From the NCBI RefSeq assembly GCF_902459465.1, contig NC_047081.1:10230001-10294000 (forward strand): 64,000 nucleotides of DNA, given 5' to 3'. The stretch is from Asterias rubens. Lineage: Eukaryota. This document shows, one piece after another, positions 1 to 60,900 of this stretch. The stretch's first letter is position 1; each line of letters opens with the position of its first letter. The position numbers and the translations under genes were made by a program. Below the pieces are notes generated by a model that did no database searches, was not told the origin of the DNA, and saw only the letters and a list, made by a program, of their open reading frames with translations.

Positions 1-3000
1 ACTTTGCCTGAGATGGGTGGGCAAACACGTGCCCCTACCAACGACGTTTGCGCCGTCGTCAGCAGCGACAGCAGCAACGGGTAGATTTAGAATATCAACA
101 TCAGTCATTGCAGCAACTAGCAAAATTGACTTTTCTTCGCACCATGGATTCCTTCCTTCATGTTCATACACATCAATCGTGAGAAGACATTCTTCTTCAT
201 CGACTTTTGTACAAGGAATGAGACATTTACAAAAACTCAAAGAAGATCAAGATGAAGACTTTTGCAGAGAGTCGTGGGCAAGCGGAAGATTTTTAGTTCT
301 GTACGACATGAAACCTGTACTTAAACAATTGGAAGATGGGAAACAGTGGGGAATAGCATGGAGTAATGTAAATGGTATTGGTCAATTTATTTATTGCAAT
401 TTTGGCTAGGGATAACTTTCCGTATGGCGCCACCACTTTTTCACTCATTTTTACAAAAAGGGATATATCAATCAGGTAAATTAGATACTATATTATTTTA
501 TTTCGAATGAAAAAGTGGTGGCGCCATACGGAAACTTTTCCTTGGCTAGATACAGATTTGCGTGAAAACTTACATTTTTAGTTATCTTATTTAATTAAAT
601 CATAATTGATTTGAAGAAGTCAGATTGTTTCATTTCTTCTGTCTTTAATTAAGCTTAGTCACCTCTAGACCCAGTAACTGGGGCACTGTACTGTACTCCT
701 TTTTACTGGGTCTAAGTTACCTCTGTGACCCCAGTCCAAATCCTTCCTAGAGTTGTTTACTTCCATAATTCAGAAACAAATAATATTTCTTTTCTCAGAT
801 CTTTGTGACATTCTTCAAGAGGCTCACCAAAGCACAGTGGAAGAGTCGATTGTCTTAAATTGTATTAGTTCTGACACCAGTGGCCCAGCCAAGTTTGCAT
901 TCAACATTCCTGCCAAGACTGATCCAGAGCATAAGAGGGAAATTGAAGAAGCCTTGGGAGGCTTTGCAGTCAGTGAAAGAAAAGCGTTCTTTGTTGTATC
1001 GAGGGAAGATGCTCGGGTTTTATCTCAGGTACTCTGTCAATCCTAATAATTTTTTTGTTTGTTTCATTGTTATTTGATTCTACGGAGCCAGAAGAGATAA
1101 TTCATAATAAAGTTTCCTTCCCTCAAAATTGTACACTTTTCAGGGAATGAACTGTTCTTTTTAGGAAACAAAATGAGGTAACAAAATCTCAATCAATCAT
1201 TAAAAAGCAACTTGATGGATGTTAAAAAAAACTATAAATAAATAGTCAACTTGCAGGTACAACCATGTGCAAATCTCTTTTGTGTGAGTGTTGGCTCTGA
1301 GAATATTTACACATGGTTCTTGCAATTTTTACATATTCTATGGATGTCTTCAAACACTACCTGATGGTTGTGGGGTTTTTTTTTGCAGTGTTTCGCACTT
1401 CTTCAATGGCATTCCAAGAATGGGTTTTGCTCCAACTGTGGCAGTAAGACGAACAAAGACCCCCCTGGTGCAAAGAGGGTGTGTCCAAATTGTGAAGTCA
1501 TTCACTACCCAGCAGTAAGTAAACAAATCTTGAAGACAGGTTCATGTTCAATTTTATGATGCACTCAATTACCAACATAGATACATGTAGATGACAATGT
1601 GGATAACAAGTCTTTAACCTCACAATGAAGTGATATAAAGTAAAATTGTAATTTTTTTTTTCATTCAGAATGAAATGTGATTCATGGAGTCATTGAATGT
1701 CAACAATTTACAGGTACCTTTTGTCAAAAGGTCAAATTCAATGTAGTTTTGATTTCAATGTCAGGAAAATTCACGATAAACTAAAATGTTTTGTTCATTA
1801 GCCGAAGCTGAGGATCTTGGCTTGGGTGCTCGACTGGTACTACTCCCCCTTTTCATGTTTTTTAATCTTCTGTGTTTTTAACTTCTTGTGTTCTAGTGTT
1901 TTTATTGTTTGCTTTGTTGTTTTTTCCCCACTGTTCATTGGGAAAGTTGCTTTGTTTTTTTTGTAAAGCACTTTGAGGCTCTACGTAAGGTGCTTTATAA
2001 ATCCTTTTTATTGGCTTGGTTCAGGTGTAGATTTAAAAAATTATAACATTTTGTGTTTTCTTTTCTTGGTTTGCTTTAAAGGTGAGCCCAGTTGCTATAG
2101 TACTAGTAACCAACGGAGATAGATGTCTCGTTGTACGACAGAAGAAGTTTCCACCGGCCATGTATAGCGCCATCGCAGGATTCTGTGAGCCAGGTAAGTG
2201 CTGATGTAACGCCTAATATTATTTTGAGTTTTGTCCCGATTTTAGGATTTTTCATGTAGGCCCCTTCACCTTCAAGTTTTATTGAAAAGGAAAGGTGAAG
2301 AACCAAGACAAACCTTTTCCTTGTTGTGATCAAACATTTGCCTCCGATTTCACTTTGTGGGTAATTTCTCTAGGAAGCAATTTGAGAATGTCTGCAGGGG
2401 CCTGATAATAATTCTAATATAATATAGCGCATTTCCAAAAAAATTATCAATGCGCTTTACATACAAAAACAATAGCAATTATAATGCACTAGAATAAATA
2501 AGTTTTGAGGTTGCGTTTGAAAGCAAAAACAGTTGGAGAGGATCTTATGGTACGAGTGATAAATCGCTGTAGTGATGACCACTATACTTTGGATTTTAGG
2601 GTGTTTGTGAAATGGTTCTACTAGCCTTACAAACAGAGCTTTCTTACATTTTTGCCAAAATACTTTGACAAAGTGTTAATTTAGTAACTATAGCCTTAGG
2701 GGCTACTATACAAAAAGCTTGTGCAAATAACCTGACATGAATCCTGCGTATTAATTCTTCCTTTTTATTTAATCAGGAGAGGCATTGGAAGCAACCGTTA
2801 GACGAGAAATTGCAGAGGAAGTCGGCCTGGAGGTTGAGGACGTTACTTTCTTCTCCTCTCAGCCATGGGCCTTCCCATCCAGTACACTGATGTTAGGATG
2901 CCACGCCCATGTCAAGCAAGGAACGGCAGATGAAGTGGGTTTAATAACGGACATTATCTTTTTCGATTAGTAGAGATGAATACTAAGCCAATGGGCTGGG

Positions 3001-3729
3001 GAGGTCTCTATTTTAAAGAGATTCTTAAGCAGAAAATATTACTTAACAGAGCAATATCTTTTGTCTAGAAAATATTGCTCAACAATTTTCTTCTAAGCAG
3101 AAATGAGCGGGATACCAGTCACAGAGTGTGCATTTGACATAGTAGTTTGGCTTGTAACCTTATTCTTGCCTACGTTTGACAAAAGCACATTTTTCTGTAG
3201 GTTTTTCATCTACCATGTTGTAAGCTACACATTGCTGAAACTGGTAAGCAGAGCCATGACATTGGAGCATAAAGTGTTGCAAATGTTTAAAATAATGCGG
3301 TTCACCTAATGGCATGTGCATGATATCATCAAGTCAGTGCAACAATGTTGATTTTGCAAACGTCATATGTCAGCATGTTTTTCTTTTGCGTGTACAACCA
3401 GGTTATTAAAGGGACATAAAATGCTTCAACAATTTCAAATTGTGTACAATTCAAATGCTATTTTAGGAGATACAATGGTTTTACACTGTCATTATGATAT
3501 AGGGCTGCTGGGATTTATATTAGCATTTCCTTATGTACGTTTCTCTGGTTACTGTGTTGTACAGGTAAATCTTGATGAGGCAGAACTTGAAGGATCAAGA
3601 TGGCTCCATCGAGATGAAGTCAAAGCAATTCTTAAAGAGAATACTCCAGGGCGAGGTGATGGAGTATGGTTCCCTCCATCCAGAGCTATAGCACACCATC
3701 TTCTAAAAAGTTGGGCATCTCAACAATAA
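1..3729 (+). CDS. NUDT13: NAD(P)H pyrophosphatase NUDT13 (NudC-like Nudix hydrolase), 5'-truncated. Exons <1-374, 799-1028, 1389-1514, 2082-2193, 2777-2934, 3565-3729
   Basis: Frame is open from position 2. The N-terminus is Ser/Arg-rich like a mitochondrial presequence and is followed by RHLQKLKED (human RYLFELKED). Contains a CSNC..CPNC zinc ribbon, YSAIAGFCEPGE, the Nudix box GEALEATVRREIAEEVGL and the SQPWAFPSS NADH-pyrophosphatase signature. All introns are GT-AG and phases close. Confidence 0.92.
410..541. mobile_element. 132-bp MITE (family R2) with ~34-bp TIRs and 8-bp TSD
   Basis: TIR GGA(T/A)AA(C/G)TTTCCGTATGGCGCCACCACTTTTTCA. TSD TTGGCTAG at 402-409 and 542-549. Confidence 0.9.
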
Positions 3730-16000: not shown

Positions 16001-17974
16001 GTTCAAATGTTGACTTTCACTCGTGAAATATCTTTCAATTATGAATAATGTGTATAGAAGGATTCTTACTCCATTTTATAAAAATGCATTTAATTTTCTT
16101 CATTAGCGCACGTTCAAATTTAGAACAGTTCAAATAAAAAATAATTAGATAGTATTTCAAATCTAGCATTATAATCGGCTCAATGGGAGGCAAGTCTCAG
16201 TGGTTTACAAGACATTCTACCTCCTTGATAAGACCGACCTCGCTAAGTGCATAACTTGTTTTTGTCATTTAAAAATTAACTTCCTCTCTGATACTGAAGC
16301 CAAATGATGGATTCAGAAATTTGTCAAATCTCCTTGGTGGAATAGAGCAATTTATAGCACATAGAGGTCATTCACACGCCGTACTAAAGTTGGTCTAACT
16401 CAACTTAGACCGGTTCGGGTTTAACTTTTGTGCGTCTGAATGCATAAAAAATGAGACCGGATCGGGTTTAAGCCCCCAAAGTTAAACCATCCAGTAAAGG
16501 CTATAATCTGAATACAGTAAACAAATCTGGCAGATTCAAGGACCCCCCCCCCAACCTTTGTACGAAGGTTCTTGTTATACTGTACAATGTATATTAACAG
16601 TTTATAAAACCTAGTCCATTTCAGCCTAAAAAAACATGTAGATTGCCTGTAAAAGACACACCTATTGTATTGCTTTGTGTACAAGGGAGTGCCTTTGTTA
16701 TTGTAATCCAATAAAGACACCCATAATGTATCAATATTTGGACACGTATGCAGTCATTGTCTACAAACTAGGAGTGTGAACATGTACAAGGTTACATGCT
16801 GTTATGGTTCTTCCGCATGAGTAGTTTAGCTGAAAGCGTTCGATTAAACCATACCATGATTAAATTAACTTTTGCATCACAAGTCTAGTATACGTGTACT
16901 ATAATGTACACTGATTGTGGACAGATGCACATAATGCATCAATATTTCATTTCATTTCTGGTTGGCAAATGACTTGCTCCTAGCAAAGGGAAATTAATCA
17001 CAACCCAATGGAGAGAAGATTTATAAGGAAAGAAGTTTCAGTTTCAGCAAGGGGCGATACGAGCAATCATGTAGGGACTGTAAACCCAATCAAATAGTGA
17101 CCCCCGGGGGAGATTCAAACCACATTATTCAATTCATTACAACATCCTAAAGAACATCAAGCACATGCAGTTTGCATTGAAAAACAACCTTTTAAGAACT
17201 ATTAATAGGAGGCCTACAGGGTATAAATCCTTTCACGCTAAACCCCTAAAGACTGTGGATCATCTTGGAAACTGCCTATTTATCAGGTAGCTTTTAGCAA
17301 TAGTTCGCTAAAAACACTGCCAAGATTCCCTTTTTGTGAAAAATTGAAACCCTCCCCCTAAGAAAAAAATTATAATACTAATAAAATCGTAAATTTTTAA
17401 ATTTTGTACACTATGCAGAAGAAAACTATTGTAAGTAGATTTCGAGACAACTGTAAAAATACTAATAATAATTTGGAGTTTAAAAAAGAAAAATTTACTA
17501 GAGTAGGACTTGAACTTGTGACCTCCGGATTGATGTGACCTCCGGATTGATGTGCCAGCGCTCTACCAACTGAGCTACCTAGCCCCTATGTTGGAGGTCT
17601 TTCTATTTTGTCAAAACTTTTGTTGGCAGTGAAAGTAAGAGTAAAATAGCCTTGTTCAAACTTTACCTGAGCGTCACCAGATCCCCAAGTTCCACGGGAA
17701 GGCTGCGTAGTTTATTAGCCGATAAATCCAAGTGCATCAGGGAGGTCAGCTTGCAGATCTCCGGCGGTACCCTGGTCAGGTTGTTGTCGTTCAGGTAGAG
17801 CGCCGTCAGGAATTGAAGACTCCATAGCTGGGGGCTGAGATTGCGGATTGTCCCTACGATCTCCAACTGCTCCCAGTGGGGCTTTTTGCCGGAGACGATG
17901 TCGTCGGGGGACATGATGCGGTACTGCCGCCGATGGTTGTTGTGGTTGTTTTGTTCATAACGATCCTTAGGCAT
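10049..17974 (-). CDS. CNOT6: CCR4-NOT deadenylase subunit 6 (CCR4; LRR + EEP nuclease), 570 aa. Exons 17974-17667, 14597-14422, 13983-13915, 12863-12551, 12072-11918, 11459-11217, 10876-10599, 10219-10049
   Basis: MPKD start, LRR repeats (LTALYLNDNNL, LDLSANKLRSLPVELG), and EEP motifs SYNVL, ICLQEVE, HIHWDPEYSDVK, LCGDLNSLPDSG, YTNYTYDFKGVIDYIF and VPSDHFSL. The spliced length of 1713 nt closes in frame. Probably the single pro-orthologue of vertebrate CNOT6/CNOT6L. Confidence 0.96.
10975..11175 (-). mobile_element. Probable LINE 3' end with AATAAA and a (TTGAA)n tail
   Basis: Minus strand ends AATAAATGTTGAATTGAATTGAATTGAATC. A similar AATAAA + (TATC)n tail lies at about 23155-23200. Confidence 0.45.
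11748..11910. repeat. Degenerate ~35-bp tandem array of the palindrome TGCCCCATGGGGCA
   Basis: Copies at about 11749, 11824, 11859 and 11893, plus a decayed copy near 11790. Confidence 0.8.
14264..14421 (-). repeat. 32-bp tandem repeat x5, each copy beginning at the CNOT6 exon donor sequence
   Basis: Unit on the minus strand is GTAAGTTCATTCTTTTTTTCACCTCTCACCTC. Copies start at 14421, 14389, 14357, 14325 and 14293. Confidence 0.95.
14885..15060 (-). mobile_element. CAGGCCTG-ended ~175-bp MITE (family R4; hAT-like termini, superfamily unresolved)
   Basis: Same element at 4594-4765, 24191-24373, 30750-30914 and 51334-51493, and degenerate at about 7840-7965 and 40365-40530. All share GCCTTGGTGCCCTTG repeats. 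Confidence 0.75.
15236..15475. mobile_element. Harbinger/PIF-type MITE with ~90-bp TIRs
   Basis: GGCTCAATTTCATAGAGCTGCTAAGCACAAAAATTTGC... is mirrored at the right end, which is followed by CAG. Related termini occur at about 3760, 8981, 13575-13730, 14229, 42222 and 47050-47210. Confidence 0.8.
17471..17627 (-). mobile_element. tRNA-like repeat (family C), reverse copy with an internal 17-bp duplication
   Basis: Reverse complement aligns with 59495-59632. GTGACCTCCGGATTGAT occurs twice. Confidence 0.75.
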
Positions 17975-18024
17975 CCTGGAGGTTTTTTCTGTAGGGAAGA
18001 TAGTTCAAAAGTGGGTTTAAAAAC

Positions 18025-18358
18025 CGATAGTCTGAAGGTCCGTTAATCCAAAGGTTCGATAGTCCGAACGCACAAATTTCCCATAACAGGGGGTTCATTA
18101 GTCCAAAAATGAAATAGGGTTCTTTAATCCGAACATTTGATGCGATAGTCCGAAGGTTCACTAGTCCGAAGGTTCATTGATCTGAAGGTTCATTGATCCG
18201 AAGGTTCACTGGTCCGAAGGTTCGGTAGTCCCCATAGTTAGGGTAAGGGACCTAACTTATTGTCAATTCGGACTATCGAACCTTCGGACTATTGAACCTT
18301 CGGACAAACGAACCTTCGGACTAACAAACCTTCAGACCATCGAAACTTCAGACTATCG
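18025..18358. mobile_element. Foldback-type element with arrays of TAGTCCGAAGGTTC subrepeats in inverted orientation
   Basis: Forward subrepeats at 18025-18230, a central GTTAGGGTAAGGG, and reverse-complement subrepeats GAACCTTCGGACTA at 18265-18358. Confidence 0.75.
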
Positions 18359-19825: not shown

Positions 19826-22800
19826 ATGGCAGCCTCCATGAGCACCGTGCTTGCTTCTTTTGCAGCAACAAAGTCGCGAGGTAAGCTTTCTGATTTAGTC
19901 TGACAATTTGTATCCTTTCATCGAATGTCGCGAGAATACTCGGATAACTTTCCGTATGGCGCCACCACTTTGTGAAAGCTTGACCGCACTCTGCCTGCTG
20001 GATTTCTTTCATTCTCAATTTCAAAATTTGATTTGCAGAATTATCAATAAACAAAGTTTTGTAGCCGACGGTGTCTTCTAAATATACTAAATCTTATCTT
20101 TTGTTTACGTTGTTAAAATTTATTTAAGTTCTTAATCTTAATCTTGTTTTTACAAAAACATTTAATAATTCATTCAAATGTCTCTTCAAATCGAATGTTC
20201 AAGTTCAACTTTCAATTTTGGTTGATAAACAACTTTGTTTACTTAATTAAATCAAATTTTGTCAAGTTTACAAATTATTGATTGTCATTATAATTTGAGC
20301 ACTTTTTTATATTTCAAAACGACACAATACTACTATATACTTATGAAAGTTGTTTCAAATTCGATGCAGTAGTTTACTGCAAGCAGTTGACGACTGTATT
20401 CCGACTTCACCATGGAGCTGCGATGGGACCACATCACGAGAAAAGAACGTTGACTGCAACTCACATCTCCAAAAAATTTACAGGTTCGCTTCATTTGCAT
20501 AAGAGAAGGTGGGTATTTTTTTATATGTCGGTCAGCTTGGTTATGTATTACAACAATTCTATAGCCATGACGACAGGTAATGAGTCGCATATGAAATAAA
20601 TGTTTGTACCAATTAGTTTTTCCAAATTGTTCTGAAACAGGCGAGGAGGTTACTTTTCTTAATTTGTTGTATGTTTTGAATTCAATTGAAAACTTGAGAC
20701 ATTCACCCAAAATTCTTTGACATTCTAATATTTCAGGGCTCACCCTTAACTCGAGTACGGAGTACAGTAAAAATTGCTACGGGCTAGTACAGTAGACACC
20801 ACTTCTAACCTGCCCTTTATCATAATTGCTTCTCTCCACCCAGGAGTGCATATTGGTACCATGCGAGAGCTGGGGAGTAACCTGCGATGGACTGGCATCC
20901 TGTCCAGGGGGAATAGAAATATTCTCAGTCGTTTATTGCCAAGGAAACTGGATTTAAACACTGGCCGCCCGAGCCATATTGGTTTGGGACAGATTTAACT
21001 TCAAGCTAATGAGGATGATTGGACAGCATTTATACATCTTTTTAACCTTCTCTCTTTCACACAGTTTCGCAACTGAAGTATCCCACCAGCTGGAAGACCC
21101 AACCATTGACCAAACCCCAGAGGAGACTCTGCTGACCATTAAAGAGAAACCCAAAGGCTATCTAGCCTGGAAACCAGTGGATGACGTCTACATGCGTATG
21201 CATTATCCACCCCAGTTACAGACATTTCAGGATGCTATGGAAACATTAAGGAAACAGGACAAGTGGATGTTTTGTCGTCGAAAGAGTAAACATGAAGACA
21301 GGACGGTAACCATCTCTATGAATCTCGACATGGCTCTACAGAAAAAGGTTAGGGAGACAAAATAATGATATAGTAATAATAGTTTTTGGTTGAACAAAGA
21401 AAAAATGAGTGGGAGGTGGGACTTCCAAATTATCTGCTGTCTATTCCTAATCTTATCTTCATCTTCCTTTCATATGCCTCAGAGTTTAGCACGTCAATAC
21501 AATAATAAAATGTCCCATTCAGAAATATTTGACAGAAAAATGTGTAAACTTTTCAGCTTTCTCTTTCTCTCTAGAAAAAAGTGGAGCCATTCCAAGGTGT
21601 AGTACTTCTTCCTCACCCCTTCAAGTCGGACAACAGAATTCTTTGCTTTGCAAGGGTAAGTCTAAGACCATATGTGCATCTACAGTTTTTACATTTTACA
21701 CATAAATGGTCAGACAGTAGGATGGTTGGCTCTGTGCTGTGTTAATAAATTCACCAAATGATGTCGTTTTGCATAGTTTATCTATCATTAATAATATCTC
21801 AGCGAGTTTGTGTAGTTTGATATTAAAAAGTCAAAGATTTTCACATGGGGGTGTATTAAGTTGACTCCTAAAGACCGGTTCATACTTCCTGCAAATGTGA
21901 TACAATTTTTGACGTCACAAATTCGCAACAAATAACTCGCATCAACTGTCCTGTGCTCAACTCCTGCGAAAAACGGCCCGTCCGTGACGTCAACACTCAA
22001 ATCGCATTTGATTTTACTCTCTTAGAGTTCTCATTTTGAAGTGAACATTTTATTTCACAGGGCACAGATGAGCAGAATGCTATCGATGCTGGGGCCGACA
22101 TTGTTGGTGATGAGACCATCGTTCCAAAGGTCCTCAGCCGGAAGATCAAGAACTATGACTACTGTGTGTCGACGCCTGACATGATGCCGGAACTGGTCCC
22201 ACTGAAGAGATTGCTCAGGAAGAAGTACCCAAGCTCCAAAAGAGGTGAGAGGGTTATTTGTATTCCTATAAACCCTTGCAGCATAGATTGGTGAATTTTG
22301 ATTCTAAAAAATTGGAGTTTCTAGAAAAAGATTCTTGGTGAAAAGCACTGCAGCTGTTGATAATTTAGACTATTTTGAGAAAGTGATATAGTATTAAAAA
22401 TTAAAAATGTTCACACAAAAAAACAATTGTATCTGAGAAGGATTCATACATGAGTCCTTTCTCAAATTTCTGAGGATTGGTGTCCATTCCTGAATGCTTT
22501 GGCCAGAGATGCGGTTGGTACCTGATGTCACTTCGCTTAACACTTCGCTTTGACCTCGTGGAATTAATGACAAATTTTAAAGTGCTCTGTGGATCTATTT
22601 GATACTATTCCCTTTTTAACACTTTTTCTTCCAGGTTCGGTTGGGCTGGATCTTCGGAGTATGATACACAGATACAAGAAAGGACAGGAATATAAATGCC
22701 AGATTAAATGGGCCCATGTCAATGTTTCAATCGGAAAGGTAAACCCAAACGTAGACATTTTTTTTGTGACTTTTAAACTTCTCAACCTACAGGGTTTTCC

Positions 22801-28584: not shown

Positions 28585-31500
28585 ATGGCCGACGTAGTCG
28601 ACAAAAGTTCTTTGGAATCACCAAAAAAGCGTCCCCGACTCGAACATAAAGAGCCACTTATCATTTCCCCAAATTCAGTAGAAGCAGAAAAGTCTCACGT
28701 ACCGACAGGGACTGATAAAAAAGCAATTTATTCATCGAGAGAGAGATTTTCGAAGGGAAAAGATTCGCTCAACTTCGACCCCGGATCTGGCGCTGGATTC
28801 GAACATGGACTTCCGCCCGACGAAACTCACGTCTTATCAGAGAGATTCACTTCAGATTTGGATGATGATTTTCTTCCAGAGCAAAACGGTTGGTGTGAAC
28901 TTAACGTTACCTAAACTTCTGATACATTATTTGAGGTGGATTTGACGAGTTGTAAATTAGTTTGTTTGAAAAAAGAATTAATTACAAAATTATTAAAAAT
29001 AAAATAAAATTTTTAATTAATAATAATATTAATTAACTATTGGAAAAGTTTCCGTATGGCGCCACCACTTTTTCATTCGATATGAAATAATATAGTATCT
29101 AATTTACCTCAATGAGATATCCCTTTTTGTAAAAATGAGTGAAAAAGTGGTGGCGCCATACGGAAAGTTATCCTTTATTTGTTACATAATTGAGGCCCCT
29201 ATATAATTATAATATATAAATATAAAATTAAATTTTTTGTTGACATTTCTTAATTATTTTGTGTATTTATAAATTTACTGTTTATTTCTTTCTTTATTTA
29301 TTGAATGTTATTGTTATTGTTAATAAATGTTTGTAATTGTTCATAATATGAACCGTGACGGGCAAATAAAATAAATTCAGAAAGTTAAATTGTATTCCAA
29401 AAACAAATTTAAACTAATCAAATGAAAGTTGAACTTGAAGGCGGCCTAGGCAGGTATGGTAGTTTGGATTTAAGCTGGCACTGGCTACAAATTATTATAT
29501 AGCAAAAAACTATGTTCTCTGGGGTGGATAAAAATTAAGCCAATAGTTCGCGATAATAATATTAACTGAATAATTAATATTGTCTTTTTTTGTTGTGTAA
29601 TCATTGACTGCAGAGGGGAGGTAAAAGAGGAGTTCATGCTTGATAATGGACGCTTTAGGATACTGTATTTACATGTGATTGGTTACAATAAATATAACGT
29701 GGGTCGTTCGATACTCGCCGAAGCGTTACAATTATTGTAACTAAATTGTGATGACATTTCATTTGACACTCTGTGTTTTAATTGCCTTTCCAGGTGACTG
29801 CCACAGCGTTTTGCGCCGGGCATCTTCCAGCAGTCCAATAGCCGCCGACACCAACAACACTTCCCCAAGGTTTGAGGAGTCTGATGCGGAGAGTGATGGG
29901 GAAGAGAGCAGCTCTGTGAGTGACGAGGGAAGCTTAAGATCCCTCGATGGTGATCTAGATCTTGGCTTGGGTGATTGTGACCTGGTACAACCAACGGGTA
30001 AGATGTAATCCTAGGCTAATGGAAGTCTTCATCTCACCCCAAAGTTGGATCCGGATTGACAATTTGTTTTTTGTTTTTAAAGAAAATTAGAGGGGATGGG
30101 CAAAAGCTATTAACTTGTCGTAAAATAGCGACAAACAAAAATTAGGATTTTGTGTCAATCGATTTTAAAAAAAAGGTTTTACAAAAATTGACGAACCAGT
30201 CAAAACCTAGCGAATCGAAATTCAAACCAACTGGTCGTGCTGGCTAGTTGAAAAAAGTGAAGAGCAATAGTGTACAATTCAGTAATTTAGATTGACTTTT
30301 TTCCCCTTGCTTTTATTCAGTTGGTCCAATGGGCTGGCTTCACCGGCAGATGATGTCAGGCGTCCATCCACGTTCCATCCTCTCAAAGCTCATACCGAAC
30401 ATGTCTGCATCCCTGCCGCAGGATCTAGATGAGTTTGAGGTGTGGTCTATCATCGCTGATTACTTCAACATGCTGCGGGAGCCACCGCGGCGGAAAAAGC
30501 TGCAAGACGTGAACTCGTTTGAAGACGCCTTGAATCTGTTGCGGAGCTCCAAGAGGATCATGGTGCTGACAGGGGCAGGGGTGAGTTCTATGCCTTTAAA
30601 AATGTTGGGGTTAACAAGCCAGGGACTTTCATATTTTTTTCTATTTTCTCAACTGAAAATATCACAGGTAACTTTTATTGAATCTTTCTAGATAATGTTG
30701 CCTATAAATCAGCATTACATTGATGAAAAACCAATCAAGATTACAAAGCCATGCCTGTAAGTCATCTTTGAGAGGGCAAGGCCATTTTCATTTTGCCCAG
30801 GGCACTTCCATTAGAAAATCTTGAAGTCAAAAGGGAAAGTTTTGAAAAGACCAAGTAAAGACCAGGAGCAATGGAGGCCATGGATTCCACGGCCTGCGCT
30901 TAATTTCAGGCCAGGGTTCAGTTGTGGGAACCAGACCGCTGTAACAGACTCTGCCTTAGATTACTCCAAAATCCATACACGGTTCATTGGTTTTGAATTC
31001 CGATGCTTTTTATTTCCTCAGGTTTCTGTATCGTGTGGCATCCCTGACTTCAGATCAAGAGATGGTGTCTATGCCAGACTTGCTGTGGACTTCCCAGACC
31101 TCCCAGATCCACAGGCCATTTTTGATATCAACTACTTTCGACGGAACCCCAAGCCTTTCTTTAAATTTGCAAAGGTAGGCGGACGCTTTCCGGGTTTCTT
31201 TGTCTCTCTTTTTGTTTCTTTACTTGTGCACATTCTTTTTTTTTAGGGGTTGGTACACAAACTACTAAGTACATAAATCAATTTACAAAGCACTAAGCAA
31301 CTTTGGGTTATTTTTATTGATGTTAGCCACTATCAATATCAATAACATATTTTTGGGGCTGGTAACCTGTTTCTGCTAAGCAAGATTATGTCTTTTCTAA
31401 GTATTATTTTTAACAGCCATGATGAATTTTAAATCAGACACTGTTCTTTGTTTCCCAATGTAGGAAATCTACCCCGGTGAATTCAGACCATCCACATGCC

Positions 31501-35376: not shown

Positions 35377-35722
35377 TTAAAGGGAAGGTACACATTGGGT
35401 AATTACTCAACTCACAACAAATATTAGCTTAAAAACTGACTTGGTAACGAGCATTGGAGAGCTGTTGATAGTATAAAACATTGTGAGAAACCGCTCCCTC
35501 TGAAGAAGCGTAGATTTTGAGAAAGAGGTAATTTTTCACTAAGATATTAAAAGACTTCTAGCCAGATTGTCTTTTATTCCTATCTGAAAGCACACATTTT
35601 CTCGCAACTTCGATGACCAATTGAGCCCAAATTTTCACAGGTTTGTTATTTTATGCATGTTGGGATACACCAAGTGATAAGACTGGTCTTTGACAATTAC
35701 CAATAGTGTCCACTGCCTTTAA
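35377..35722 (+). mobile_element. R1 (Kolobok-type) MITE
   Basis: Same internal sequence as 4182 and TTAA at both ends. Confidence 0.8.
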
Positions 35723-35985
35723 TGCCTTGGCCTGACATGTAGTCCTTGTACAATTTTCCTACTTTTTTCCAACGGACCAAATACCATGTCTGCAATAACC
35801 TTGCTCTATGGTATTACTTAGTAAAGTTGTTATCGAGAAAATTAGCTGTTCAAAGTTACAAGATTATATTTATTTTATTTGACATGTAATGATGACGTTT
35901 TTAAATTTACAATTACACTGCCATTGAATTTCTTCTAGAGTAGATGTTATGTGCACAAGGGAACAAGACGATTATGACTACACCC

Positions 35986-36379
35986 TTAAAGACACTGGAC
36001 ACTATTGGTAATTACTCAAAATAACTGTTAGCATAAAAACTTACTTGGTAAGAGCAATGGAGAGCTGTTACATTTAAAAACAATGTGAGAAACAGCTCCC
36101 TCTGAAGTAACATAGTTTTTGCGAAAGAAGTAATTTTCCACTAAAATATTTGAATTTGCTTTGGAGACCTCGGAATTTTATTTTTGAGGTCCTGAAATCA
36201 AGCATCTCAAAGCACACAACTCAAGTGACAAGGGTGTTTTTTTCTTTCATTATTATCTCGCAATTTCGATGCCGAATTGAGTTCAAATTTTCAAGGGTTT
36301 GTTATTTTGTGCATATGTTGAGATACACCAAGTGAGAAGACTGGTCTGTGACAATTACCAATAGTGTCCAGTGTCTTAA
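35986..36379 (+). mobile_element. R1 (Kolobok-type) MITE, longer variant
   Basis: ttaa-AGACACTGGACACTATTGGTAATT...AATTACCAATAGTGTCCAGTGTC-ttaa. Confidence 0.8.
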
Positions 36380-37492
36380 AAAAACAAATTGGTCTGTAGT
36401 TTAAACTTAGACAGTGATATTTTGCAGGTAGAAAAACAAACAAATGTCAAACAAATATCCAATGGGTTGGTAGTTATGTTTGTATTAAATTATAGGGTTT
36501 TCTGTTGTTATTTTGGAAGGTTCAAACCAGGGCTTAATTTCCCAGAGCTGCTCAATCAGGAAACATTGGTTAACAAGTAATGATGTGCTTATAGCACAAA
36601 TAAGCAGAAAACCCTCAACATTGAGCAATGGGCATCATACATCTTTAAAACTACCACTAGTTAAATTTTATCAAAAATTTTACTCAGTTTGTTTTGTCAC
36701 AACTTTTAACCATTATAAATTGAATTGAACCAATTTTGTGGTGTGGTTTTTTTGTTAATAATAAAGCAAAATGGCCAACCATTTCTTCCTCATATTATTT
36801 CAAACCTATGAGTACGACTGCTGCATCCTAGAGCACATGTCTCAATTAAGAGTAGTCTTGAAATCAAGTCGGTAATTGTTAAGCGCGGTGTGGTCACGGG
36901 GACGATACACTCATCCTCGAGCCAGTATGTGTGTGAGTCAGTCGACAGCTGCCACGTGCTACCTATGACCGTTGCATGGATGTATAATCGCACTGTGACT
37001 GTTGCATGACGGCAGAATGTGTGTTTGTAACTAATAGGCAGCGCCTAACGACTTGTCATCAAGTCTAAATAAACAGGGGCTCCAAGGTCAAATTGAGCTT
37101 TGTGATGCAATCAATTTTTTTTTTTTTTTTGGATCTATAGTCCTCATGAAAGCAGGGACAAAATTAAAAGTCTCAAATCTCACAATAAAAGGTTGTAATG
37201 GATGCCATTTTATTTAAACTCTTTCAAAACCAATGGGTCAGTACATTCCAAACGGGAGTTTCTGCACCAGTCATAACCACAAACTCGATGCTGATGTTTC
37301 GATTGAATATCATCAGAGTTCAGGCATGAACTGACAATTCTTTCTGAAATGAAATTGCTCTCTTGAAGGGTATCAAAGATACATGTAGTAGCATTTTACA
37401 CCTGTTATTTTAACCCAAGGTTATACACTTTGTGCTTTATTAGGTGACTTTGCAGACTTGTAATTTTGTCCAAATATTCGTAAGGACTCTAT

Positions 37493-52300: not shown

Positions 52301-55300
52301 AACAAAATAAAAGTCTGGACAAGACAAGTTCATACAAAGCAAAGTTTTACACAAAAATATAGCAAAATAATTAATGAAACTAGATAATATAGAAAACTGA
52401 CAAAAAGTTACAATGTAAATCAACCTGTTAAAAAAGAAAAGATGAGACTTACAATAGAAAACACAATATAAAAAATACTGTTAAAAAAACACAATTCTAA
52501 CAGCATATTCATTTTACAATGTTACAAACACAGTTAAAAAATGGCAATACTGTATTCTTTAGAGCACTTAAAAACACCCGGGCATTATCAAAGCGCTCTC
52601 TATTTGCACCAACAGGATGAGCAGAATAAGAGCAACTACAAATATACATATTAATAGTAAACTTGCGGGTACAACCGTGGGTAAAATCTCTTTTGAAGGA
52701 GTGGTGGCTCTGAAAGGAGCCGGTTTGGTCTCGACGTTTCGAACAGTACACTCTGCTCGTCTTCATACACCATTTAGGATGAGCAGAGCTGCTATGTTCT
52801 GAATCATGCGAACTTTTAAGTAGCTCCTTCTAATGTTTTATTTTACCTACGACTTTACATCGCATTCAAAGCATGAAGAACAGTATGGTTAAGTGTCTCA
52901 CAGCACTTTTAACCACCCAACCTACAACAATAACATGCACACAAAGACATGTTGATACAAAACCTGACAATTCCCGCGTCTGAAATAAAAAACTTACTTT
53001 GGAATGACCCTAATCTGCAGCACGGGTGCTTCCAACTCATCTCTCTTATGCTTCCGGCCACGGCTTCTCTTCTTCTTCTTATCACCGTCCTCACCTCCCA
53101 ATGCCTCCGAGTCGGTCCTCGTCCTCTTTGCTTCCCCGCCGGCAATCCCCGCCTCCTTGCGACTCTTCTCCTTCACGCTGTCGACGCTGCTGATGGATTC
53201 ATCTCGTCTCCTCTTGTTTGCTTTGTCCTTTTGTGCACTTTTTGCCTCAAAGTCCAATCTGTCGTCTTCCCCGGACTGTTTCCGCTTTTTGGCGCTCTTT
53301 TGCTCTTTCGGTGTCTGCGCGTCTTTCTTGTTGGGCGTCTTTGTTTCTACTTCACGAGATGCCGTCGACTTCCTCTTTGACTTCTTCTCAAGCTGTGCTC
53401 CTTCCTCGACGTCTTGTGTCGCCTCGCTCGTCTCCCTCTTTCTCTTTAACAGTGTCGGCTCTGTGAGGATCAACCGTCCTTTCCTTGTCAGCGGGAATCT
53501 GCCGTCCAAAGGTTTCTCAGTTGTAGGATTGTCTAGAAGCTATAGTGAAAGAAAAAATGCCAAAGTGGCAATTATTAACTGAATTTAATAAATTTAAAGG
53601 TGTGTTACTTGTAGGATTGTTGAGAGAAAACAAAACAAAAACACCAATACAGGGCTACATAAATAAAAAAAAAATAAAAAAAATGACTGCCAAATAGAAA
53701 ATTTGATAAAACCTTTTTACCTTGCAGGCATTTGCAGCTTCATCAGGGGTCGTGAACTCTACAAAAGCAAATCCCTTAGTGTCTCTTGTGTACCTGTACT
53801 TAGGTATACTAATATAAGCAATGTTTCCACACGGGCTGAACATCTTCCTCAACATCTCCAAGTCCACATTATGAGGCAAGTTTTCCTTTTGGGTAGAAAA
53901 AGAGGAAAACATGTTCAATCATCAGGCATGATCTTTGGTCCTTGGGAAAAAATATACTTTATCGAGTAAGGCCGACTTAACTTACCTACATGTACACATG
54001 GTGTAGGCTTTAAAGACACTGGACACTATTGGTAATTGTCAAAGACCAGTCTTCTCACTTGGTGTATCTCAACATATGCATAAAATAACCAACCTGTGAA
54101 AGTTTGCACTCAATTGGTCGTTGAAGTTGCGAGATAATTATAAAAGAAAAAACACACAAAAATTGTGTGCTTTCAGATGCTTGATTTCGAGACCTCAAAT
54201 TCTAAATCCGAGGTTTCAAAATCATATTCGTGGAAAAATTACTTCTTTCTCGAAAACTATGTCACTTCAGAGGGAGCCGTTTCTCACAATGTTTTATACT
54301 ATCAACCTCTCCCCATTACTCATTACCAACTAAGGTTTTATGTTCATAATTATTTTGAGGAATTACCAATAGTGTCCACTGCCTTTAATCATGTTGCAAT
54401 GCCCTGAAATATTCTAGGTTCCTTACCACGTATACAGTTAAATCATTCTCATCGTATTTTGGTTTCTTCGGTGGATTCTTTCTCTTCACCCGTTTCTTAT
54501 CCTCACTGACCTAAATATCGTGAAAAGATAAATAATGTTATTTTAAATGTCACAATAAGACGGAAAAAAGTATATATAATAATCCATAATCTATTCTTCA
54601 AAATGATCTCACATGTTTTTTACAAGAAAATTTCCACTGAACCTAGAAGTTTTAGTAAAATATAAATTCAAGAAAAAAAGACGGTCAGGTTTCTGTAAAA
54701 CAATCGGAGCGTTAGAAAGCTGTTGTGTAACAGCCGTTCATCATCGTGTTGCCATGACTACTGCCAAACATGCACAGAAACTTGAACACCAGGTTACAAG
54801 ACGGCTATGACTGAGTTGTGCGTGTATTGCAAACTGGTTAAGATTACAGATACCGGTTTACAATACCTCTAAAAGATCGCAGTTTTCCATTGCTCTGACG
54901 ATGAGTGATGGATCTTTTGTCAGCAATTGCATACGGTTGAAGTTGGCGATGACAGAAACGTCAATACCTGGGGGAACAAAAACAATACTTGTTATTATTT
55001 TGTCATGAACTGTCCTCAACCAAGCAAGTTTTTGGCACACAGCAATCAAGAGTTTGGATACAGATAAGATTGTAGTACGATGTTACATCCCACATTTCTG
55101 CTCATTTCTTAATCACCATCCTATTGGCGCTTGCATTGTTGGATTCAAATCAACATCACGGGTGAGAGTCATTACTGACGAAAAAGTATGAAACTTGGAA
55201 ACAAACTCAAAGGTATGTTGAAATGATGCCATTTCTACCGATTGGCAACACCTGGGGTTATAGACTCCAAGGAGCTTTTGATAACAGTATCCAAAGCACT

Positions 55301-56273: not shown

Positions 56274-56903
56274 GGTCGATTTCACAAAGATCTAAGATTG
56301 ATCGTAACTGCAAATCAATCGCAGTTGCTATGAAAATGGTGATGTCACAATACTAATTACTATGCCGGTGATACTGAAAAATTGTCTTGCGATGAATTTT
56401 ATGGGTCCTACTACTTGCCGTCAACTCGCCGTCAACTCACTTGCGCCGTCAACTCGCCGTCAACTCCTCCAATATACATTTAAAATCCACAAAAGAAGCA
56501 TAGAACTGTAAAGTATCAGCTCAAAGAGCATTCGCGTAAGTTTTAGGTCATATTTCGGAATAAAAATTGATTTTTTTTCTCGTGAAAAAAAATTCTCGAA
56601 GCCAAAAAACTGTCGGCCGCCATCTTGCTTTTTCACAATGATTAGTCTTGGCCCAAGATGTCAATGATAGGTACTTTTTTTTTATCAACACAAAGTCGTT
56701 TTTGTGAATGAATTTGTACCGAAAACCATGAGAAATATCTAGTTTAGCCCAGACTTAACACTTCCGTGCCCCCTTTTTATAGATTTTTCATGTAAATTTA
56801 ATGAGTTGACGGCACGAAAATGAGTTGACGGCGAGTTGACGGCAAGTCAGCGAGTTGACGGCAAGTAGTAGGACCGAATTTTATTGCTTTGTGAAATCGG
56901 CCC
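56274..56903. mobile_element. Harbinger-type MITE (CTG TSD) interrupted by a second element
   Basis: ctg-GGTCGATTTCACAAAG...CTTTGTGAAATCGGCCC-ctg. Confidence 0.75.
56404..56875. mobile_element. 472-bp nested MITE with perfect 26-bp TIRs, subterminal 11-mers and a 9-10-bp TSD (Mutator-like)
   Basis: TIR GGTCCTACTACTTGCCGTCAACTCGC. GCCGTCAACTC x4 on the left and its complement x4 on the right. Flanks are GAATTTTATG / GAATTTTATT. Confidence 0.85.
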
Positions 56904-57923
56904 CTGTTCCTCGTTCTGAGATGATAGCAGAACAAACCTCATATTATTAACTACAGTCACGATAGTTCTAGCCCCCCCCCCCCCCCATTAATATGATTAA
57001 ATATAAGCACTCTGCACTGTGCTGCAGCAGCACTCTGCTCTTCCATCCCACGCATGGCCCAGCGGTGCGTATTTTCACGTGTCTCTTTTCATTGGCACTG
57101 TAAATGTAATACTAATATTTAATTAATAAGTATAGCTCGTTATAAAGCATACAATTATTAGTTTATCTTTGCTGACTAGTGCAAGCTATGAACAAGTCTA
57201 AACATAGAAAAAAGTAAACCTTTATAAATACTGTACATTTTCTTACCAAAACCAGCTAGCAGATTAATCAACCACCACGAGAACTTGAGAATTAAAATCC
57301 ACATGCAACATGTGCTGCTGAAAGTGAAACACTTGACTTTTTCATGTAACCTGCACAACGTCCATGAAATGGTAATTGTCATGAAACAGCCGTTTGTTTA
57401 ACCCCATCAAATATATTTTGTCCTAGGTAAGTATAGACTTTATTGTATGTAAAACGTTAACCCTTTATTGATTCAGGGGAAATGTTTTCTCGTTTACCAC
57501 TGAAATTAAACTCGTTACAAATGTTTTGAAAATTGATGTATTTATTGATCTGGACTTTGTCAATTTATTTAACTTTTTATCACTAGTGAAGTTAAAATGC
57601 ACACAATTTTAGTATAAAACAATCATTAAATTCTTGCGGATGACTGACAAAATACCTAAAATATAGTGTAACACTTGTTAAAGTTTAGACAAAACATGTA
57701 AGGACTAAGTAATTTTGTGAAAGTCTAAATCTGATTGTATTTCAATGGTAACCCACCATCTGCATTCGAATGAGTACATGGTGAAACAGGGAATCACCCA
57801 AATCTGGGCCACGTATCATTTGCACGCAAGTACCGTATGTGGTACAAAATAGATCACTCAAAAATCACTTTAAAATCATCTTATTTGATTGTGAGTAAGA
57901 TATAAACACCACCGGAGTCAGAA

Positions 57924-60900
57924 ATGAGTTGGTTAAGATCCGTACTGGGCTCGAATGAGGCTTCAGCTCAGCCGTCTGGGGCAGAAACAGTAAGTTTTGG
58001 TGGGCTGTCGATAGGCCGTCTGCTCTCTCGCTCTGTGTTTTTCTGTTTCTGTGGATTTGTTTTGTATTGCAATTTAGCATTGTATTTTTGTAATATTTTA
58101 TGTGACCGGCGTAAATTATAACAATAACAAGTCAACTCGACTTTGACTTTTTTGATTGGAAAAGTTTCCGTATGGCGCCACCACTTTTTCATTCGATATG
58201 AAATAATATAGTATTTAATTTACCTCAATGAGATATCCCTTTCTGTAAATATGAGTGAAAAAGTGGTGGCGCCATACGGAAAGTTATCCTTTTGATTTCC
58301 TCTCTAAGTTGTATATCTATTTTTTTTTTAGATCAAATGAAAATCAACAAAGAGAATATAGCAGCGCACAATAAGTATACCTTTACAAAACAAAAATAAA
58401 AAGGAAAGATTTCCATATTTGATTGTTATAAATAATAATATCTTGCCACCACCACACGGGCACGGCAAGCCAAAAGGAATATCTCATTAATTGTTGAGTA
58501 AAATTGAACATATGAAAAAAGGATAGCAGGATACAGACATTTTTGTCAAATTTTAAAACAATAAATTTGAAGCCAAATAACTGTTTACTTTTCTCTTTTT
58601 CTGATTTATATTTTGTATGGATTCTTTTTTTCTTTTTTTCTAGGTTGCTCGGCTTTGTGACCGAGTACAGTCTTCAACCTTACTTGATGACAGACGAGAT
58701 GCTGTGCGTGCCCTTAAGTCACTCTCAAAGGTAAGCATTCTTGCCCCTCCCACAACTACTGTGCCCTGTGCCCCTGCGGCAGTGATAATTGAGTGACTGC
58801 TTCAATTCTAAAAAAGGGGCTGGGCAGGTTTTGACGAGACTTACACACTTCATTTGAAAATCTTTGAGCTTATATAACAAAGAGAGAGCACTTTTTAAAA
58901 GTCTCCCCAAAGGACATAACTTGGAGACAGGAATTATTGACCTTCTGCGATGACAAAAAGCAATGTTTTCAGCTTGTAGTTAAAAACTTATTTTCCAAAA
59001 AGACCAAAAAAGTGATAGTTGGGGGAAGAAACCGCCGAACTAAAGCCTGAATGTATCAAATAAAGATATGTCAATAATAAACAATGAATGCTGTTGGAAG
59101 AAAAATTGTGTTTTTAACTTTGTTTTACAATTCTGCAAACTTTGTTTATATTCTTATCTGCCCTAGAAATTTCGCCTCGAGGTGGGGACCCAGTGCATGG
59201 ATGTGTTGCTCGGTGTCCTGCAGACAGACCGTAACGATTCGGAGATAGCGAGTTATGCAGTGGAAACACTTCTTAATGTCATTGCTCCTATCGTGGAAGA
59301 GGAAGATGGTAAGAAAGGTAGACCAGTACTTGCTTAAAAAACCCTCAAAATCTAAGGTTTAATCGTCCTGATTTTGCTTGGTGCAGGACTTTGTAATAAA
59401 TGCAGTACAAAAGTGTGAGGCCCTATTACTTGCCAAATAAACCTCTAAGTATCTATAAAAAGCAAACTCTTTTACCATGGCTTCTGACTGGCCCCCAAAC
59501 AAAGATATTGACAAAATAGGGAGACTGTCAACATAAGGCTTGATAGCTCAGTTGGTAGAGCCTCGGATGTAAACTCGGAGGTTGTTGGTTCGAGTCCCAC
59601 TCTAGTAAGTTTTTCTTTGTTCAACTCCAAATCTTTTACAATGAGTCAAAACAAAAAATTCTGAGAAAATCTAAAAAAACACCTTACGAAATATTTGAAG
59701 TTTCAAAACCTTTTCAGGGGAATTTCGCTCAAGCAATTAACCCTGCTGTTAATGATCTGGTTGATGTTTCAGAAGAGTTTCAGCAAGTGGATGTGGAGGC
59801 GAAGGAGCGAGAGAATCGAGTTCTCAGTGAGCAGTTCATTGATATCTTCCTTAAGAAGACGGACAATGTGTCCCTCTTGCTGAGCCTGCTAGAGGTAAGT
59901 TACTCAATCGTGTCATTCGGCTGAGCGGAGAAGAACACCGGACTCAAGCTCTAGTGTTTCTGATCAGCAGAGTGAGGGTCGAGTCCCGGGCATGACGCTT
60001 GTGTCCTTTACAAGCAAGACACTTAAAACCATTATTGCTGTGTCCTTTGGATGGGACAGAAAGTCGTTGGTCCTGTGTGTTGTTGTCCTATCAGGATGTT
60101 TGAGCGTGAAACCAGAGCTTGTTCTCACCAATACACTCTTGCTTTGCTGAGATGTAGACCAATGAGCCATTCCAATAGCTTTAATCAACATACTGCATCT
60201 CTTTAGAATCCCTTGCTAGGTGCATGCTTCTATCCTACAATCTAGACTGTTTTAAGAGGAATGTCAATTGCTACCTTCTCATGTTGAATGTGTGCTTCTT
60301 GTAGCCCCTTACCAAGAGTGGCTCTTAGCCTTGTTTGGGACAAACTTGCATTACAAAATAAGCAAAATAATATTTAGGTATTCTATTCCAACAATACTTG
60401 TAATTATTAAAAAAGGAATTATATGTTGTGCTCTCGCTCTCTCTCTCTCATCATTTCAGGAGTACGAGTTCCGAGTCCGGTGGCCAGCCATCCGTCTGAT
60501 GACCGCTCTTATTAACTTCCGGTCATCTCAAGTCCAGCAGAGCATCTTGGTCAGTCCCATGGGTGTCTCCAAACTGATGGATCTGCTCTCTGACAGCCGT
60601 GAGGTCATCCGTAATGATGTGAGTGTAGCAACATGGGTACAAGAGGGGTACAAGAGGGGTACACGAGGGGTACAAGAGGGGTACACGAGGGGTACAAGAG
60701 GGGTACAAGAGGGGTACAAGAGGGGTACAAGAGGGGTACACGAGGGGTACAAGAGGGGTACAAGAGGGGTACAAGAGGGGTACAAGAGGGGTACAAGAGG
60801 GGTACAAGAGGGGTACAAGAGGGGTACAAGAGGGGTACAATAGGGGTACAAGAGGGGTACAAGAGGGGTACAAGAGGGGTACAAGAGGGGTGTTGAGGTG

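What the first reader, a model, noticed from the sequence alone, without database searches (positions are those of the whole stretch)
410..58289. A MITE family found only just behind first coding exons (4 of 4 copies)
Seen: all four R2 occurrences lie in the intron following the first coding exon, 35 nt (NUDT13, 410), 61 nt (MRPL1, 19942), 153 nt (SIRT1, 29042) and 168 nt (USO1, 58158) after the donor. Both orientations occur and two copies have perfect 8-bp TSDs. The other MITE families in this window are scattered. The TIR carries GTATGGCGCCACC, which contains a YY1-like ATGGCG core and a GGTGGCGC CTCF/E2F-like string. Inference: either an 8-bp-TSD transposon with P-element-like targeting of promoter-proximal open chromatin, or selective retention as a regulatory module. 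NUDT13 exon rank is assumed because its start is off-window.
Basis: partly seen in the sequence, partly recalled or inferred. Interest (0 to 1): 0.7.

Follow-up and report, generated by a model that had tools for sequence, protein, structure and literature searches.

The report
Starfish mini-transposon favouring first introns
A young 132-bp "hitch-hiker" transposon of the starfish Asterias rubens (about 1,900 copies) really does sit unusually often a few hundred bases behind an exon, usually a gene's first exon where that could be checked. This is a strong bias, not the all-or-nothing rule that this window suggested.

Summary
The four copies are real and sit 35, 61, 153 and 168 nt after the donor site of the first coding exon of NUDT13-like, MRPL1-like, SIRT1-like and USO1. 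One copy is only a 30-bp end remnant. Two copies have perfect 8-bp target-site duplications.

The family has about 1,900 copies, many identical to each other. Its 8-bp duplications, GG...CC ends and ~37-bp inverted ends fit Merlin-type elements. I did not find the autonomous partner.

"Only behind first coding exons" does not hold genome-wide, but a real bias exists.
- A consensus splice donor pointing at the element is 2.5-3.3 times commoner than one pointing away, at 35-95 nt and at 300-360 nt. The pointing-at count is the same at 440-500 nt.
- An abundant control MITE family loses this asymmetry by 300-360 nt (208 vs 230). At that distance R2 has 58 pointing-at donors against 22 expected at the control's rate (p about 2e-10).
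- In 20 independent loci, three copies lie 140-350 nt behind homology-verified first coding exons (PIGL, RMDN, a ubiquitin-like gene). One lies in the FKBP2 promoter.
- 15 of 85 loci are multi-hit hotspots.
- CpG enrichment of the flanks is small.

Best reading: insertion is targeted to the start of genes, and selection then leaves mainly first-intron copies. Another first-stage note (s1-175585) probably flagged the same family elsewhere in this genome.

The parts
410..541 (+). R2 MITE copy 1, full length (132 bp), flanked by the 8-bp TSD TTGGCTAG (402-409 and 542-549). It starts 35 nt after the donor of the NUDT12/13-like N-terminal exon.
   Evidence: It is 100% identical to at least 40 other genomic copies.
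19942..19971 (+). Solo 30-bp terminal remnant of R2 (left TIR only), 61 nt after the donor of the MRPL1-like first coding exon.
   Evidence: The junction with the downstream sequence is unique in the genome.
29042..29173 (-). R2 MITE copy 3, full length, 96% identical to copy 1, TSD decayed. It starts 153 nt after the donor of the SIRT1-like first coding exon.
58158..58289 (-). R2 MITE copy 4, full length, 94% identical to copy 1, TSD TTTTGATT. It starts 168 nt after the donor of the USO1 first coding exon.
2..374 (+). N-terminal coding exon of a NUDT12/13-like NUDIX gene, with the donor GT at 375. The frame is open to the window edge, so its rank as the first coding exon is assumed.
   Evidence: NUDIX box at 2773-2967, zinc ribbon at 1365-1556 downstream on the same strand.
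19826..19880 (+). First coding exon of the MRPL1-like gene (ATG at 19826, intron starts at 19881), inside a CpG-dense stretch.
   Evidence: Weak Ribosomal_L1 exon hit at 22052-22246.
28585..28888 (+). First coding exon of the SIRT1-like gene (ATG at 28585, intron starts at 28889), inside a CpG-dense stretch.
   Evidence: SIR2 domain exons lie downstream. There is a weak DUF592 hit at 30329-30688.
57924..57989 (+). First coding exon of USO1/p115 (ATG at 57924, intron starts at 57990).
   Evidence: Uso1_p115_head exons lie at 62953-63117 and from 63883 onward on the same strand.

Best explanation
R2 is a young, non-autonomous cut-and-paste DNA transposon (a MITE), most likely of the Merlin superfamily. 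It is mobilised in trans by a transposase that I did not identify.

New copies land preferentially in a narrow zone at the 5' end of genes that are active in the germ line: the promoter, the first exon and the first few hundred bases of the first intron. Such zones usually carry open, H3K4me3-type chromatin. Insertions into the core promoter, the 5' UTR or coding sequence are removed by selection. What survives piles up just behind the first exon, with a minority just upstream of the start codon.

The same zones are hit again and again, which gives hotspots and copies nested inside copies.

Shown here: the element's anatomy, its copy number and youth, the hotspots, the genome-wide excess of upstream donors pointing at the element relative to a control family, and first-exon identity in the cases that could be verified.

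Inferred: that the bias arises at insertion, that chromatin is the cue, and the Merlin assignment.
For: Anatomy and age
- 8-bp TSD: 14 of 30 full copies have a perfect TSD and 18 of 30 have at most one mismatch.
- The ends are GG...CC and the TIR is ~37 bp.
- There are 3,801 exact ends, or about 1,900 copies.
- All 40 scored full-length hits are 100% identical to copy 1, while the older copies in hand go down to 78%.

Hotspots
- 15 of 85 consecutive loci on contig 1 have two or more hits within 2.5 kb, against 0.75 expected.
- Copies of different ages share loci, and some are nested.

Genome-wide donor test (donor motif G|GTRAGT at a set distance from the element's ends; sense = pointing at the element, antisense = pointing away)
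- Sense vs antisense: 56 vs 17 at 35-95 nt and 58 vs 23 at 300-360 nt. Sense is 57 at 440-500 nt.
- Control MITE family (35,750 ends): 346 vs 138 at 35-95 nt, then 208 vs 230 at 300-360 nt.
- At 300-360 nt, R2 sense is 58 against 22.1 expected at the control's rate, p=1.7e-10.
- R2 antisense rates equal the control's. So copies are close to an upstream exon but not to a downstream one, meaning they sit in the 5' part of long introns.

Independent loci
- PIGL: the exon matches PIG-L profile positions 1-36, and a cluster of three copies lies ~240 nt behind it.
- RMDN: the exon is 100% identical to residues 1-100 of a 361-aa RMD1-3 protein. One copy lies 143 nt behind it, and two lie 531 and 856 nt upstream of the ATG.
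- Ubiquitin-like gene: the exon aligns to ubiquitin residues 1-33, and nested copies lie ~350 nt behind it.
- FKBP2: the signal-peptide exon is verified, and nested copies lie 375 nt upstream of the ATG.
- All four verified loci are multi-copy hotspots.

CpG
- In 18 of 20 loci the insertion site lies within 300 nt of a CpG-dense segment, against 43% of far-flank positions.
Against: - Genome-wide, CpG density of the flanks is only ~9% above the control family's (2.61 vs 2.39 per 100 nt at 200-260 nt). Other R2 copies sitting in the flanks may inflate even that. This fits a minority of copies, not a majority, lying in CpG-rich promoter surroundings.
- At 35-95 nt the control family shows almost the same sense/antisense ratio (2.5 vs 3.3).
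- First-exon identity is homology-verified for only 3-4 of 20 independent loci. I found those by looking for ATG-initiated exons, which is an ascertainment bias. My automatic first-exon scans were not discriminating.
- Some CpG-rich flanks are other repeats (L006 and L020).
- No annotation, RNA, chromatin or population data were available.
- Only one adequately sized control family was used. A second gave just 16 hits.
Confidence: 0.58

Rival explanations
1. R2 prefers the 5' ends of long introns behind any exon. The cue would be exon-proximal chromatin, or better tolerance of insertions near donors than near acceptors. On this reading the link to transcription starts is incidental.
For: - The donor statistics cannot tell first exons from internal ones.
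- Genome-wide CpG enrichment of the flanks is small.
- Several loci have a strong upstream donor but no recognisable start codon (L004, L006).
Against: - Every upstream exon that could be verified is a first coding exon: 3 in independent loci and 3-4 in the window. If exons were drawn at random, only about one in eight would be first exons.
- Some copies sit upstream of the ATG in promoters (FKBP2, RMDN).
- The insertion sites cluster with CpG-dense segments in 18 of 20 loci.
Confidence: 0.2
2. There is no special targeting. R2 is distributed like any intronic MITE, and this window's 4 of 4 is a chance cluster that the scan happened to pick out.
For: - The window is an outlier: 4 copies where 0.29 are expected, and it was selected by a reader looking for patterns.
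- A control family also shows a 2.5-fold sense/antisense excess at 35-95 nt.
- The CpG difference from the control is small.
Against: - At 300-360 nt, R2 has 58 sense donors against 22 expected at the control's rate (p=1.7e-10). The Fisher test on the sense/antisense ratios gives p=6e-5.
- Close pairs of copies are 20-fold more frequent than expected.
- Three of 20 independent loci lie within 400 nt behind verified first coding exons, against ~2.4% expected (p=0.011).
Confidence: 0.12
3. Copies are kept by selection as regulatory modules in first introns. The TIR core (palindrome TGGCGCCA, with YY1/E2F-like strings) would act as a transcription-factor site.
For: - Placement next to the promoters of housekeeping genes.
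- The TIR carries two CpG-containing, GC-rich boxes in otherwise AT-rich DNA.
Against: - Many copies are 100% identical, which is too young for copy-by-copy selection.
- Both orientations occur.
- Copies nest inside each other's TIRs (L012, L014), which destroys the supposed sites.
- One window copy is a decayed 30-bp stub.
- TIR conservation is already explained by transposase binding.
Confidence: 0.08

Closest known systems
Merlin superfamily DNA transposons and their MITEs (Feschotte 2004, as summarised in PMC8101967)
   Same: - 8-bp TSD.
- Terminal 5'-GG ... CC-3'.
- TIR length within the 24-462 bp range.
- The genome holds about eight intact 312-aa DDE_Tnp_IS1595 reading frames with near-identical scores, so a young Merlin is present.
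   Different: - No Merlin copy carrying these TIRs was found. None of 69 variant-TIR hits lies within 5 kb of the 16 transposase hits.
- I found no published target-region preference for Merlin in the papers I searched.
Drosophila P element
   Same: - 8-bp TSD.
- Insertions concentrate in a narrow zone around transcription start sites and open chromatin.
- Germ-line insertions are enriched at promoters but depleted in exons.
- The same promoters are hit repeatedly (PMC10018349).
   Different: - P ends start with CATG and its TIRs are 31 bp of unrelated sequence. R2 ends start with GG.
- P clusters on both sides of the TSS and is tied to replication origins. Surviving R2 copies lie mostly downstream of the first exon, out to about 500 nt.
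Other 5'-biased cut-and-paste elements: maize Mutator and Ac/Ds, rice mPing, Tol2, piggyBac (from my own knowledge, not checked here)
   Same: All prefer gene 5' regions or open chromatin, which gives MITE-rich promoters and 5' UTRs.
   Different: They belong to different superfamilies with different TSDs and ends. Most are described as favouring the region upstream of genes or the 5' UTR, not the first intron.

Membership tests
Merlin superfamily (non-autonomous member) | 8- or 9-bp target-site duplication | tested here: met
   14 of 30 full copies have a perfect 8-bp TSD and 18 of 30 have at most one mismatch. All 100%-identical copies in hand have perfect TSDs.
Merlin superfamily (non-autonomous member) | TIRs of 24-462 bp with conserved terminal 5'-GG | tested here: met
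   Both ends read GGAWAASTTTCCGTATGGCGCC... inward, and the TIR is ~37 bp. The criterion comes from PMC8101967.
Merlin superfamily (non-autonomous member) | An autonomous partner with the same TIRs that encodes a DDE_Tnp_IS1595 transposase | tested here: inconclusive
   Sixteen PF12762 hits, about 8 with intact 312-aa frames. None has an R2-type TIR variant within 5 kb. That pattern would miss partners that share more than 44 nt of subterminal sequence with the MITE, and no more genome letters could be fetched.
hAT superfamily | 8-bp TSD plus short TIRs that usually start YARNG | tested here: not met
   The TSD length fits, but the ends start GGAWAA and the TIR is ~37 bp. The hAT end rule is from my own knowledge.
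P superfamily | 8-bp TSD plus ends starting CA(TG), with a THAP-type transposase partner | tested here: not met
   The TSD length fits, but the ends do not. I did not search for a partner.
TSS-proximal (promoter/first-intron) targeting transposons, as a functional class | Insertions enriched near transcription starts relative to random sites and to other element families | tested here: inconclusive
   Proxies agree: sense donors against the control family, hotspots, verified first exons at 4 of 20 loci and local CpG-dense segments. Genome-wide CpG enrichment is small, and neither annotation nor chromatin data were available.

The most novel reading that the evidence does not exclude
The transposase that moves R2, or a host factor it binds, reads a mark anchored at the first exon-intron boundary. 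A candidate is the H3K4me3 peak, or a state tied to promoter-proximal transcription or U1 binding. That would make R2 a natural 'first-intron' integrating element, and the first target-region preference described for a Merlin-type transposon.
Probability: 0.2. Interest if true: 0.75.

Novelty: new member of a known kind. Interest (0 to 1): 0.45.

Why it matters
If the bias arises at insertion, this family gives about 1,900 natural integration events. Together they mark the promoter-proximal zones open in the starfish germ line, so they can stand in as a free proxy for germ-line open chromatin in an echinoderm.

It would also add a fifth or sixth superfamily to the cut-and-paste transposons known to aim at gene starts. 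That would strengthen the view that this is a general strategy of DNA transposons.

In practice, recurrent insertions in first introns and promoters of housekeeping genes (PIGL, FKBP2, RMDN, USO1, SIRT1, MRPL1) are a ready source of regulatory and splicing variation to look for in populations.

The idea itself, 5'-biased MITEs, is well established, so the finding is solid but not surprising.

Tried and rejected
1. Fetching 85 loci plus random controls. I did not try to get round it, so all wider tests use pattern counts only.
2. Naive and scored scans for 'ATG-open frame-donor' first exons. Controls scored 28%, and real first exons ranked only in the 70th-95th percentile. I dropped them as not discriminating.
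3. A self-trained codon-usage score was too weak.
4. Pfam on about 60 long open frames near the copies gave almost nothing. N-terminal exons rarely carry domains.
5. Promoter-motif scans (YY1, NRF1, CRE, ETS, DRE and others) gave too few hits.
6. Four attempts to link the MITE to a Merlin transposase all came back negative or empty:
   - the solo-TIR junction search;
   - the variant-TIR list against the transposase positions;
   - the degenerate Merlin fragment in L003;
   - a look-up in the scan's notes by sequence.
7. A shared-flank artefact as the cause of the donors at ~80 nt is rejected. The flanks are unrelated to each other.
8. 'Uniform placement within introns' as the explanation for the donor excess is rejected. 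Antisense (downstream-exon) donors are not raised for R2 at 300-360 nt, and the control family behaves as that model predicts.
9. A second control family had too few exact ends (16 hits).
10. The look-up of encoding contigs for the RMDN protein and the search for homologous proteins for the L009 frame returned nothing.
Exons were searched one by one.
Full report
**What is in the window.** A 20-nt core of the terminal repeat occurs seven times in the window, against none in shuffles. That gives three full 132-bp elements (410-541, 29042-29173, 58158-58289) and one 30-bp terminal stub (19942-19971).
- Copies 1 and 4 have perfect 8-bp target-site duplications. Copy 3 does not.
- The stub's junction is unique in the genome, so it is a decayed or truncated copy and not the end of another family.
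  - USO1: ATG 57924, donor 57990. p115-head exons lie 5 kb downstream on the same strand.
  - SIRT1-like sirtuin: ATG 28585, donor 28889. SIR2 exons lie downstream.
  - MRPL1-like gene: ATG 19826, donor 19881. Only a weak L1 hit at 22052-22246 supports the name.
  - NUDT12/13-like gene: its N-terminal exon ends at 374. The NUDIX box and zinc ribbon lie downstream. The frame is open to the window edge, so its rank is assumed.
- The distances of 35, 61, 153 and 168 nt are correct.
- Earlier notes of this scan name the genome as the starfish Asterias rubens. I did not test that.

**What the element is.** It is a MITE with ~37-bp terminal inverted repeats that start GG and end CC, and with an 8-bp TSD (14 of 30 perfect, 18 of 30 with at most one mismatch).
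- The genome holds 3,801 exact 22-nt ends, or about 1,900 copies.
- All 40 scored full-length hits are 100% identical to copy 1. Two subfamilies and older copies down to 78% identity also exist. So the family is long-lived and has burst very recently.
- These structural features are the published hallmarks of Merlin elements (PMC8101967). The genome also carries about eight intact 312-aa DDE_Tnp_IS1595 reading frames.
- I could not show that any of them carries these ends. The Merlin assignment therefore rests on structure alone.

**Does the placement generalise? Local evidence.** I fetched the first 20 R2 loci in positional order on contig 1 (10 kb each).

Homology-verified cases:
- L002: a cluster of three copies lies ~240 nt behind the PIGL first coding exon (PIG-L profile positions 1-36).
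- L011: one copy lies 143 nt behind the first coding exon of an RMD1-3 protein (100% identity to residues 1-100 of a 361-aa protein). Two more copies lie 531 and 856 nt upstream of its ATG.
- L014: nested copies lie ~350 nt behind a ubiquitin-like first exon (aligned to ubiquitin residues 1-33).
- L017: nested copies lie 375 nt upstream of the FKBP2 start codon.

By reading only, L005, L013, L020, L018, L003 and L010 also show ATG-initiated exons with a donor 77-670 nt before the copy. My objective first-exon scans could not separate such calls from background, so I give them little weight.

Other local observations:
- Other loci show no exon nearby (for example L001, L007, L012).
- Three verified 'behind first exon within 400 nt' cases in 20 loci, against about 2.4% expected, gives p=0.011.
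- In 18 of 20 loci the insertion site lies within 300 nt of a CpG-dense segment, against 43% of far-flank positions. Some of those CpG-rich flanks are other repeats.

**Hotspots.** Among the first 100 listed hits, 15 of 85 loci carry two or more hits within 2.5 kb, where 0.75 are expected. In the fetched loci, 9-11 of 20 hold several copies of different age, including copies inserted into another copy's terminal repeat. All four homology-verified gene-start loci are such hotspots. Repeated hits over time argue for a bias at insertion.

**Genome-wide test by pattern counts.** I counted consensus 5' splice sites (G|GTRAGT) at fixed distances from the element's outer ends. 'Sense' means the element lies in the intron behind the donor. 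'Antisense' means the donor points away.

| Family | Distance (nt) | Sense | Antisense |
|---|---|---|---|
| R2 (3,801 ends) | 35-95 | 56 | 17 |
| R2 | 300-360 | 58 | 23 |
| R2 | 440-500 | 57 | not run |
| R2, hexamer GTRAGT | 100-160 | 163 | 121 |
| Control MITE (35,750 ends) | 35-95 | 346 | 138 |
| Control MITE | 300-360 | 208 | 230 |

The control is an abundant, unrelated ~390-bp MITE family. It behaves as uniform placement in mostly short introns predicts: the sense excess fades with distance while antisense donors rise.

R2 differs in three ways:
- Its sense rate stays at ~1.5% of ends out to 500 nt.
- That rate is 2.6 times the control's at 300-360 nt (58 observed, 22.1 expected, p=1.7e-10). 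The Fisher test on the sense/antisense ratios gives p=6e-5.
- Its antisense rate equals the control's.

So R2 copies are close to an upstream exon but not to a downstream one. They sit in the first several hundred bases of long introns.

About 19-33% of real donors should match the 7-mer. On that basis roughly 6-11% of copies fall in each 61-nt bin, which puts a third to three quarters of all copies within 500 nt behind a donor. The flanks of the local examples are unrelated to each other, so this is not a shared-repeat artefact.

**A caution from CpG counts.** Genome-wide, R2 flanks hold 2.24 CpG per 100 nt at 10-70 nt and 2.61 at 200-260 nt. The control family holds 2.39 at 200-260 nt.
- The difference is significant but small. 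The share of ends with at least one CpG is 73.1% against 69.8%, p=0.002.
- This fits a minority of copies lying in CpG-rich promoter surroundings.
- It leaves room for the rival reading that R2 favours intron 5' ends behind any exon.
- The donor test itself cannot tell first exons from internal ones. The first-exon claim rests on the verified loci, where I searched for ATG-initiated exons and so introduced an ascertainment bias.

**Mechanism.** The most economical account is insertion targeted to the open, promoter-proximal zone of germ-line-active genes, followed by loss of insertions that hit promoters, UTRs or coding sequence.
- The first intron is then the nearest tolerated landing place.
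- This parallels the P element. [quoted passage not shown]
- From my own knowledge, active-chromatin marks peak at the first exon-intron boundary. That would fit the position, but it is untested here.
- Retention as a regulatory module is unlikely, given the many identical copies, both orientations and self-nesting.
- The TIR contains the palindrome TGGCGCCA, which is most simply a transposase-binding site. The YY1/CTCF/E2F idea could not be tested.

**Verdict.** The window observation is real and non-random. The family-level rule 'only behind first coding exons' is too strong. A genuine family-specific bias toward the 5' ends of (probably first) introns, and toward gene starts, is well supported.

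This makes R2 a new, very young member of a known kind of element, showing a known kind of behaviour that has not been described for Merlin-type elements in the papers I could search.

Another first-stage note (s1-175585) describes a 'Merlin-like MITE family' with two 132-bp insertions 82 bp apart elsewhere in this genome. It is probably the same family and another hotspot.

No contig looked human.

Noticed in passing
window 35695-36380 and 54010-54388: An abundant ~380-395-bp MITE family with 28-bp TIRs starting TTAAAGACACTGG. It has 35,750 exact ends genome-wide and 56 local hits in the 264 kb I held. I used it as the control family. Its placement fits uniform insertion into mostly short introns.
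   Followed up: partly
window 56404-56875: A 472-bp element with 26-bp perfect TIRs that also start GG (GGTCCTACTACTTGCC...), about 1 kb upstream of the USO1 start codon. It may be a second Merlin-like MITE in a promoter region. Similar strings appeared in the flanks of R2 copies elsewhere.
   Followed up: no
L003:3093-4022 (G000:C1:79460-80389): A frameshifted Merlin-type transposase remnant (DDE_Tnp_IS1595 positions 72-151, E=7.6e-9), about 900 nt from an R2 copy. It has no recognisable TIRs.
   Followed up: partly
L010:4840-5116: Two R2 copies 24 nt apart in opposite orientation. Their right flanks, CAAACGGG and CCCGTTTG, are reverse complements of each other. This looks like an inversion or recombination between copies and not two clean insertions.
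   Followed up: no
L006:4500-4680 and L020:5095-5260: The same CpG-rich ~200-nt repeat lies next to R2 in two unrelated loci. Part of the CpG richness around R2 sites therefore comes from other young repeats.
   Followed up: no
window 18025-18358: A dense array of direct and inverted ~13-nt units (TCCGAAGGTTC...) in the CpG-rich zone between an LRR gene on the minus strand (17663-17971) and the MRPL1 start.
   Followed up: no
L007:5086-5890: A minisatellite that reads through as repeated 'DTPMFRHPYVPTPLCS' peptides on both strands, right beside an R2 copy.
   Followed up: no
The genome search pattern counts: With variable gaps, forward-strand matches are merged per start position (one per site), while reverse-strand matches are counted per distinct span (all occurrences). 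Forward counts therefore mean 'sites with at least one match' and reverse counts mean 'total matches'. This matters for anyone who uses these counts.
   Followed up: yes
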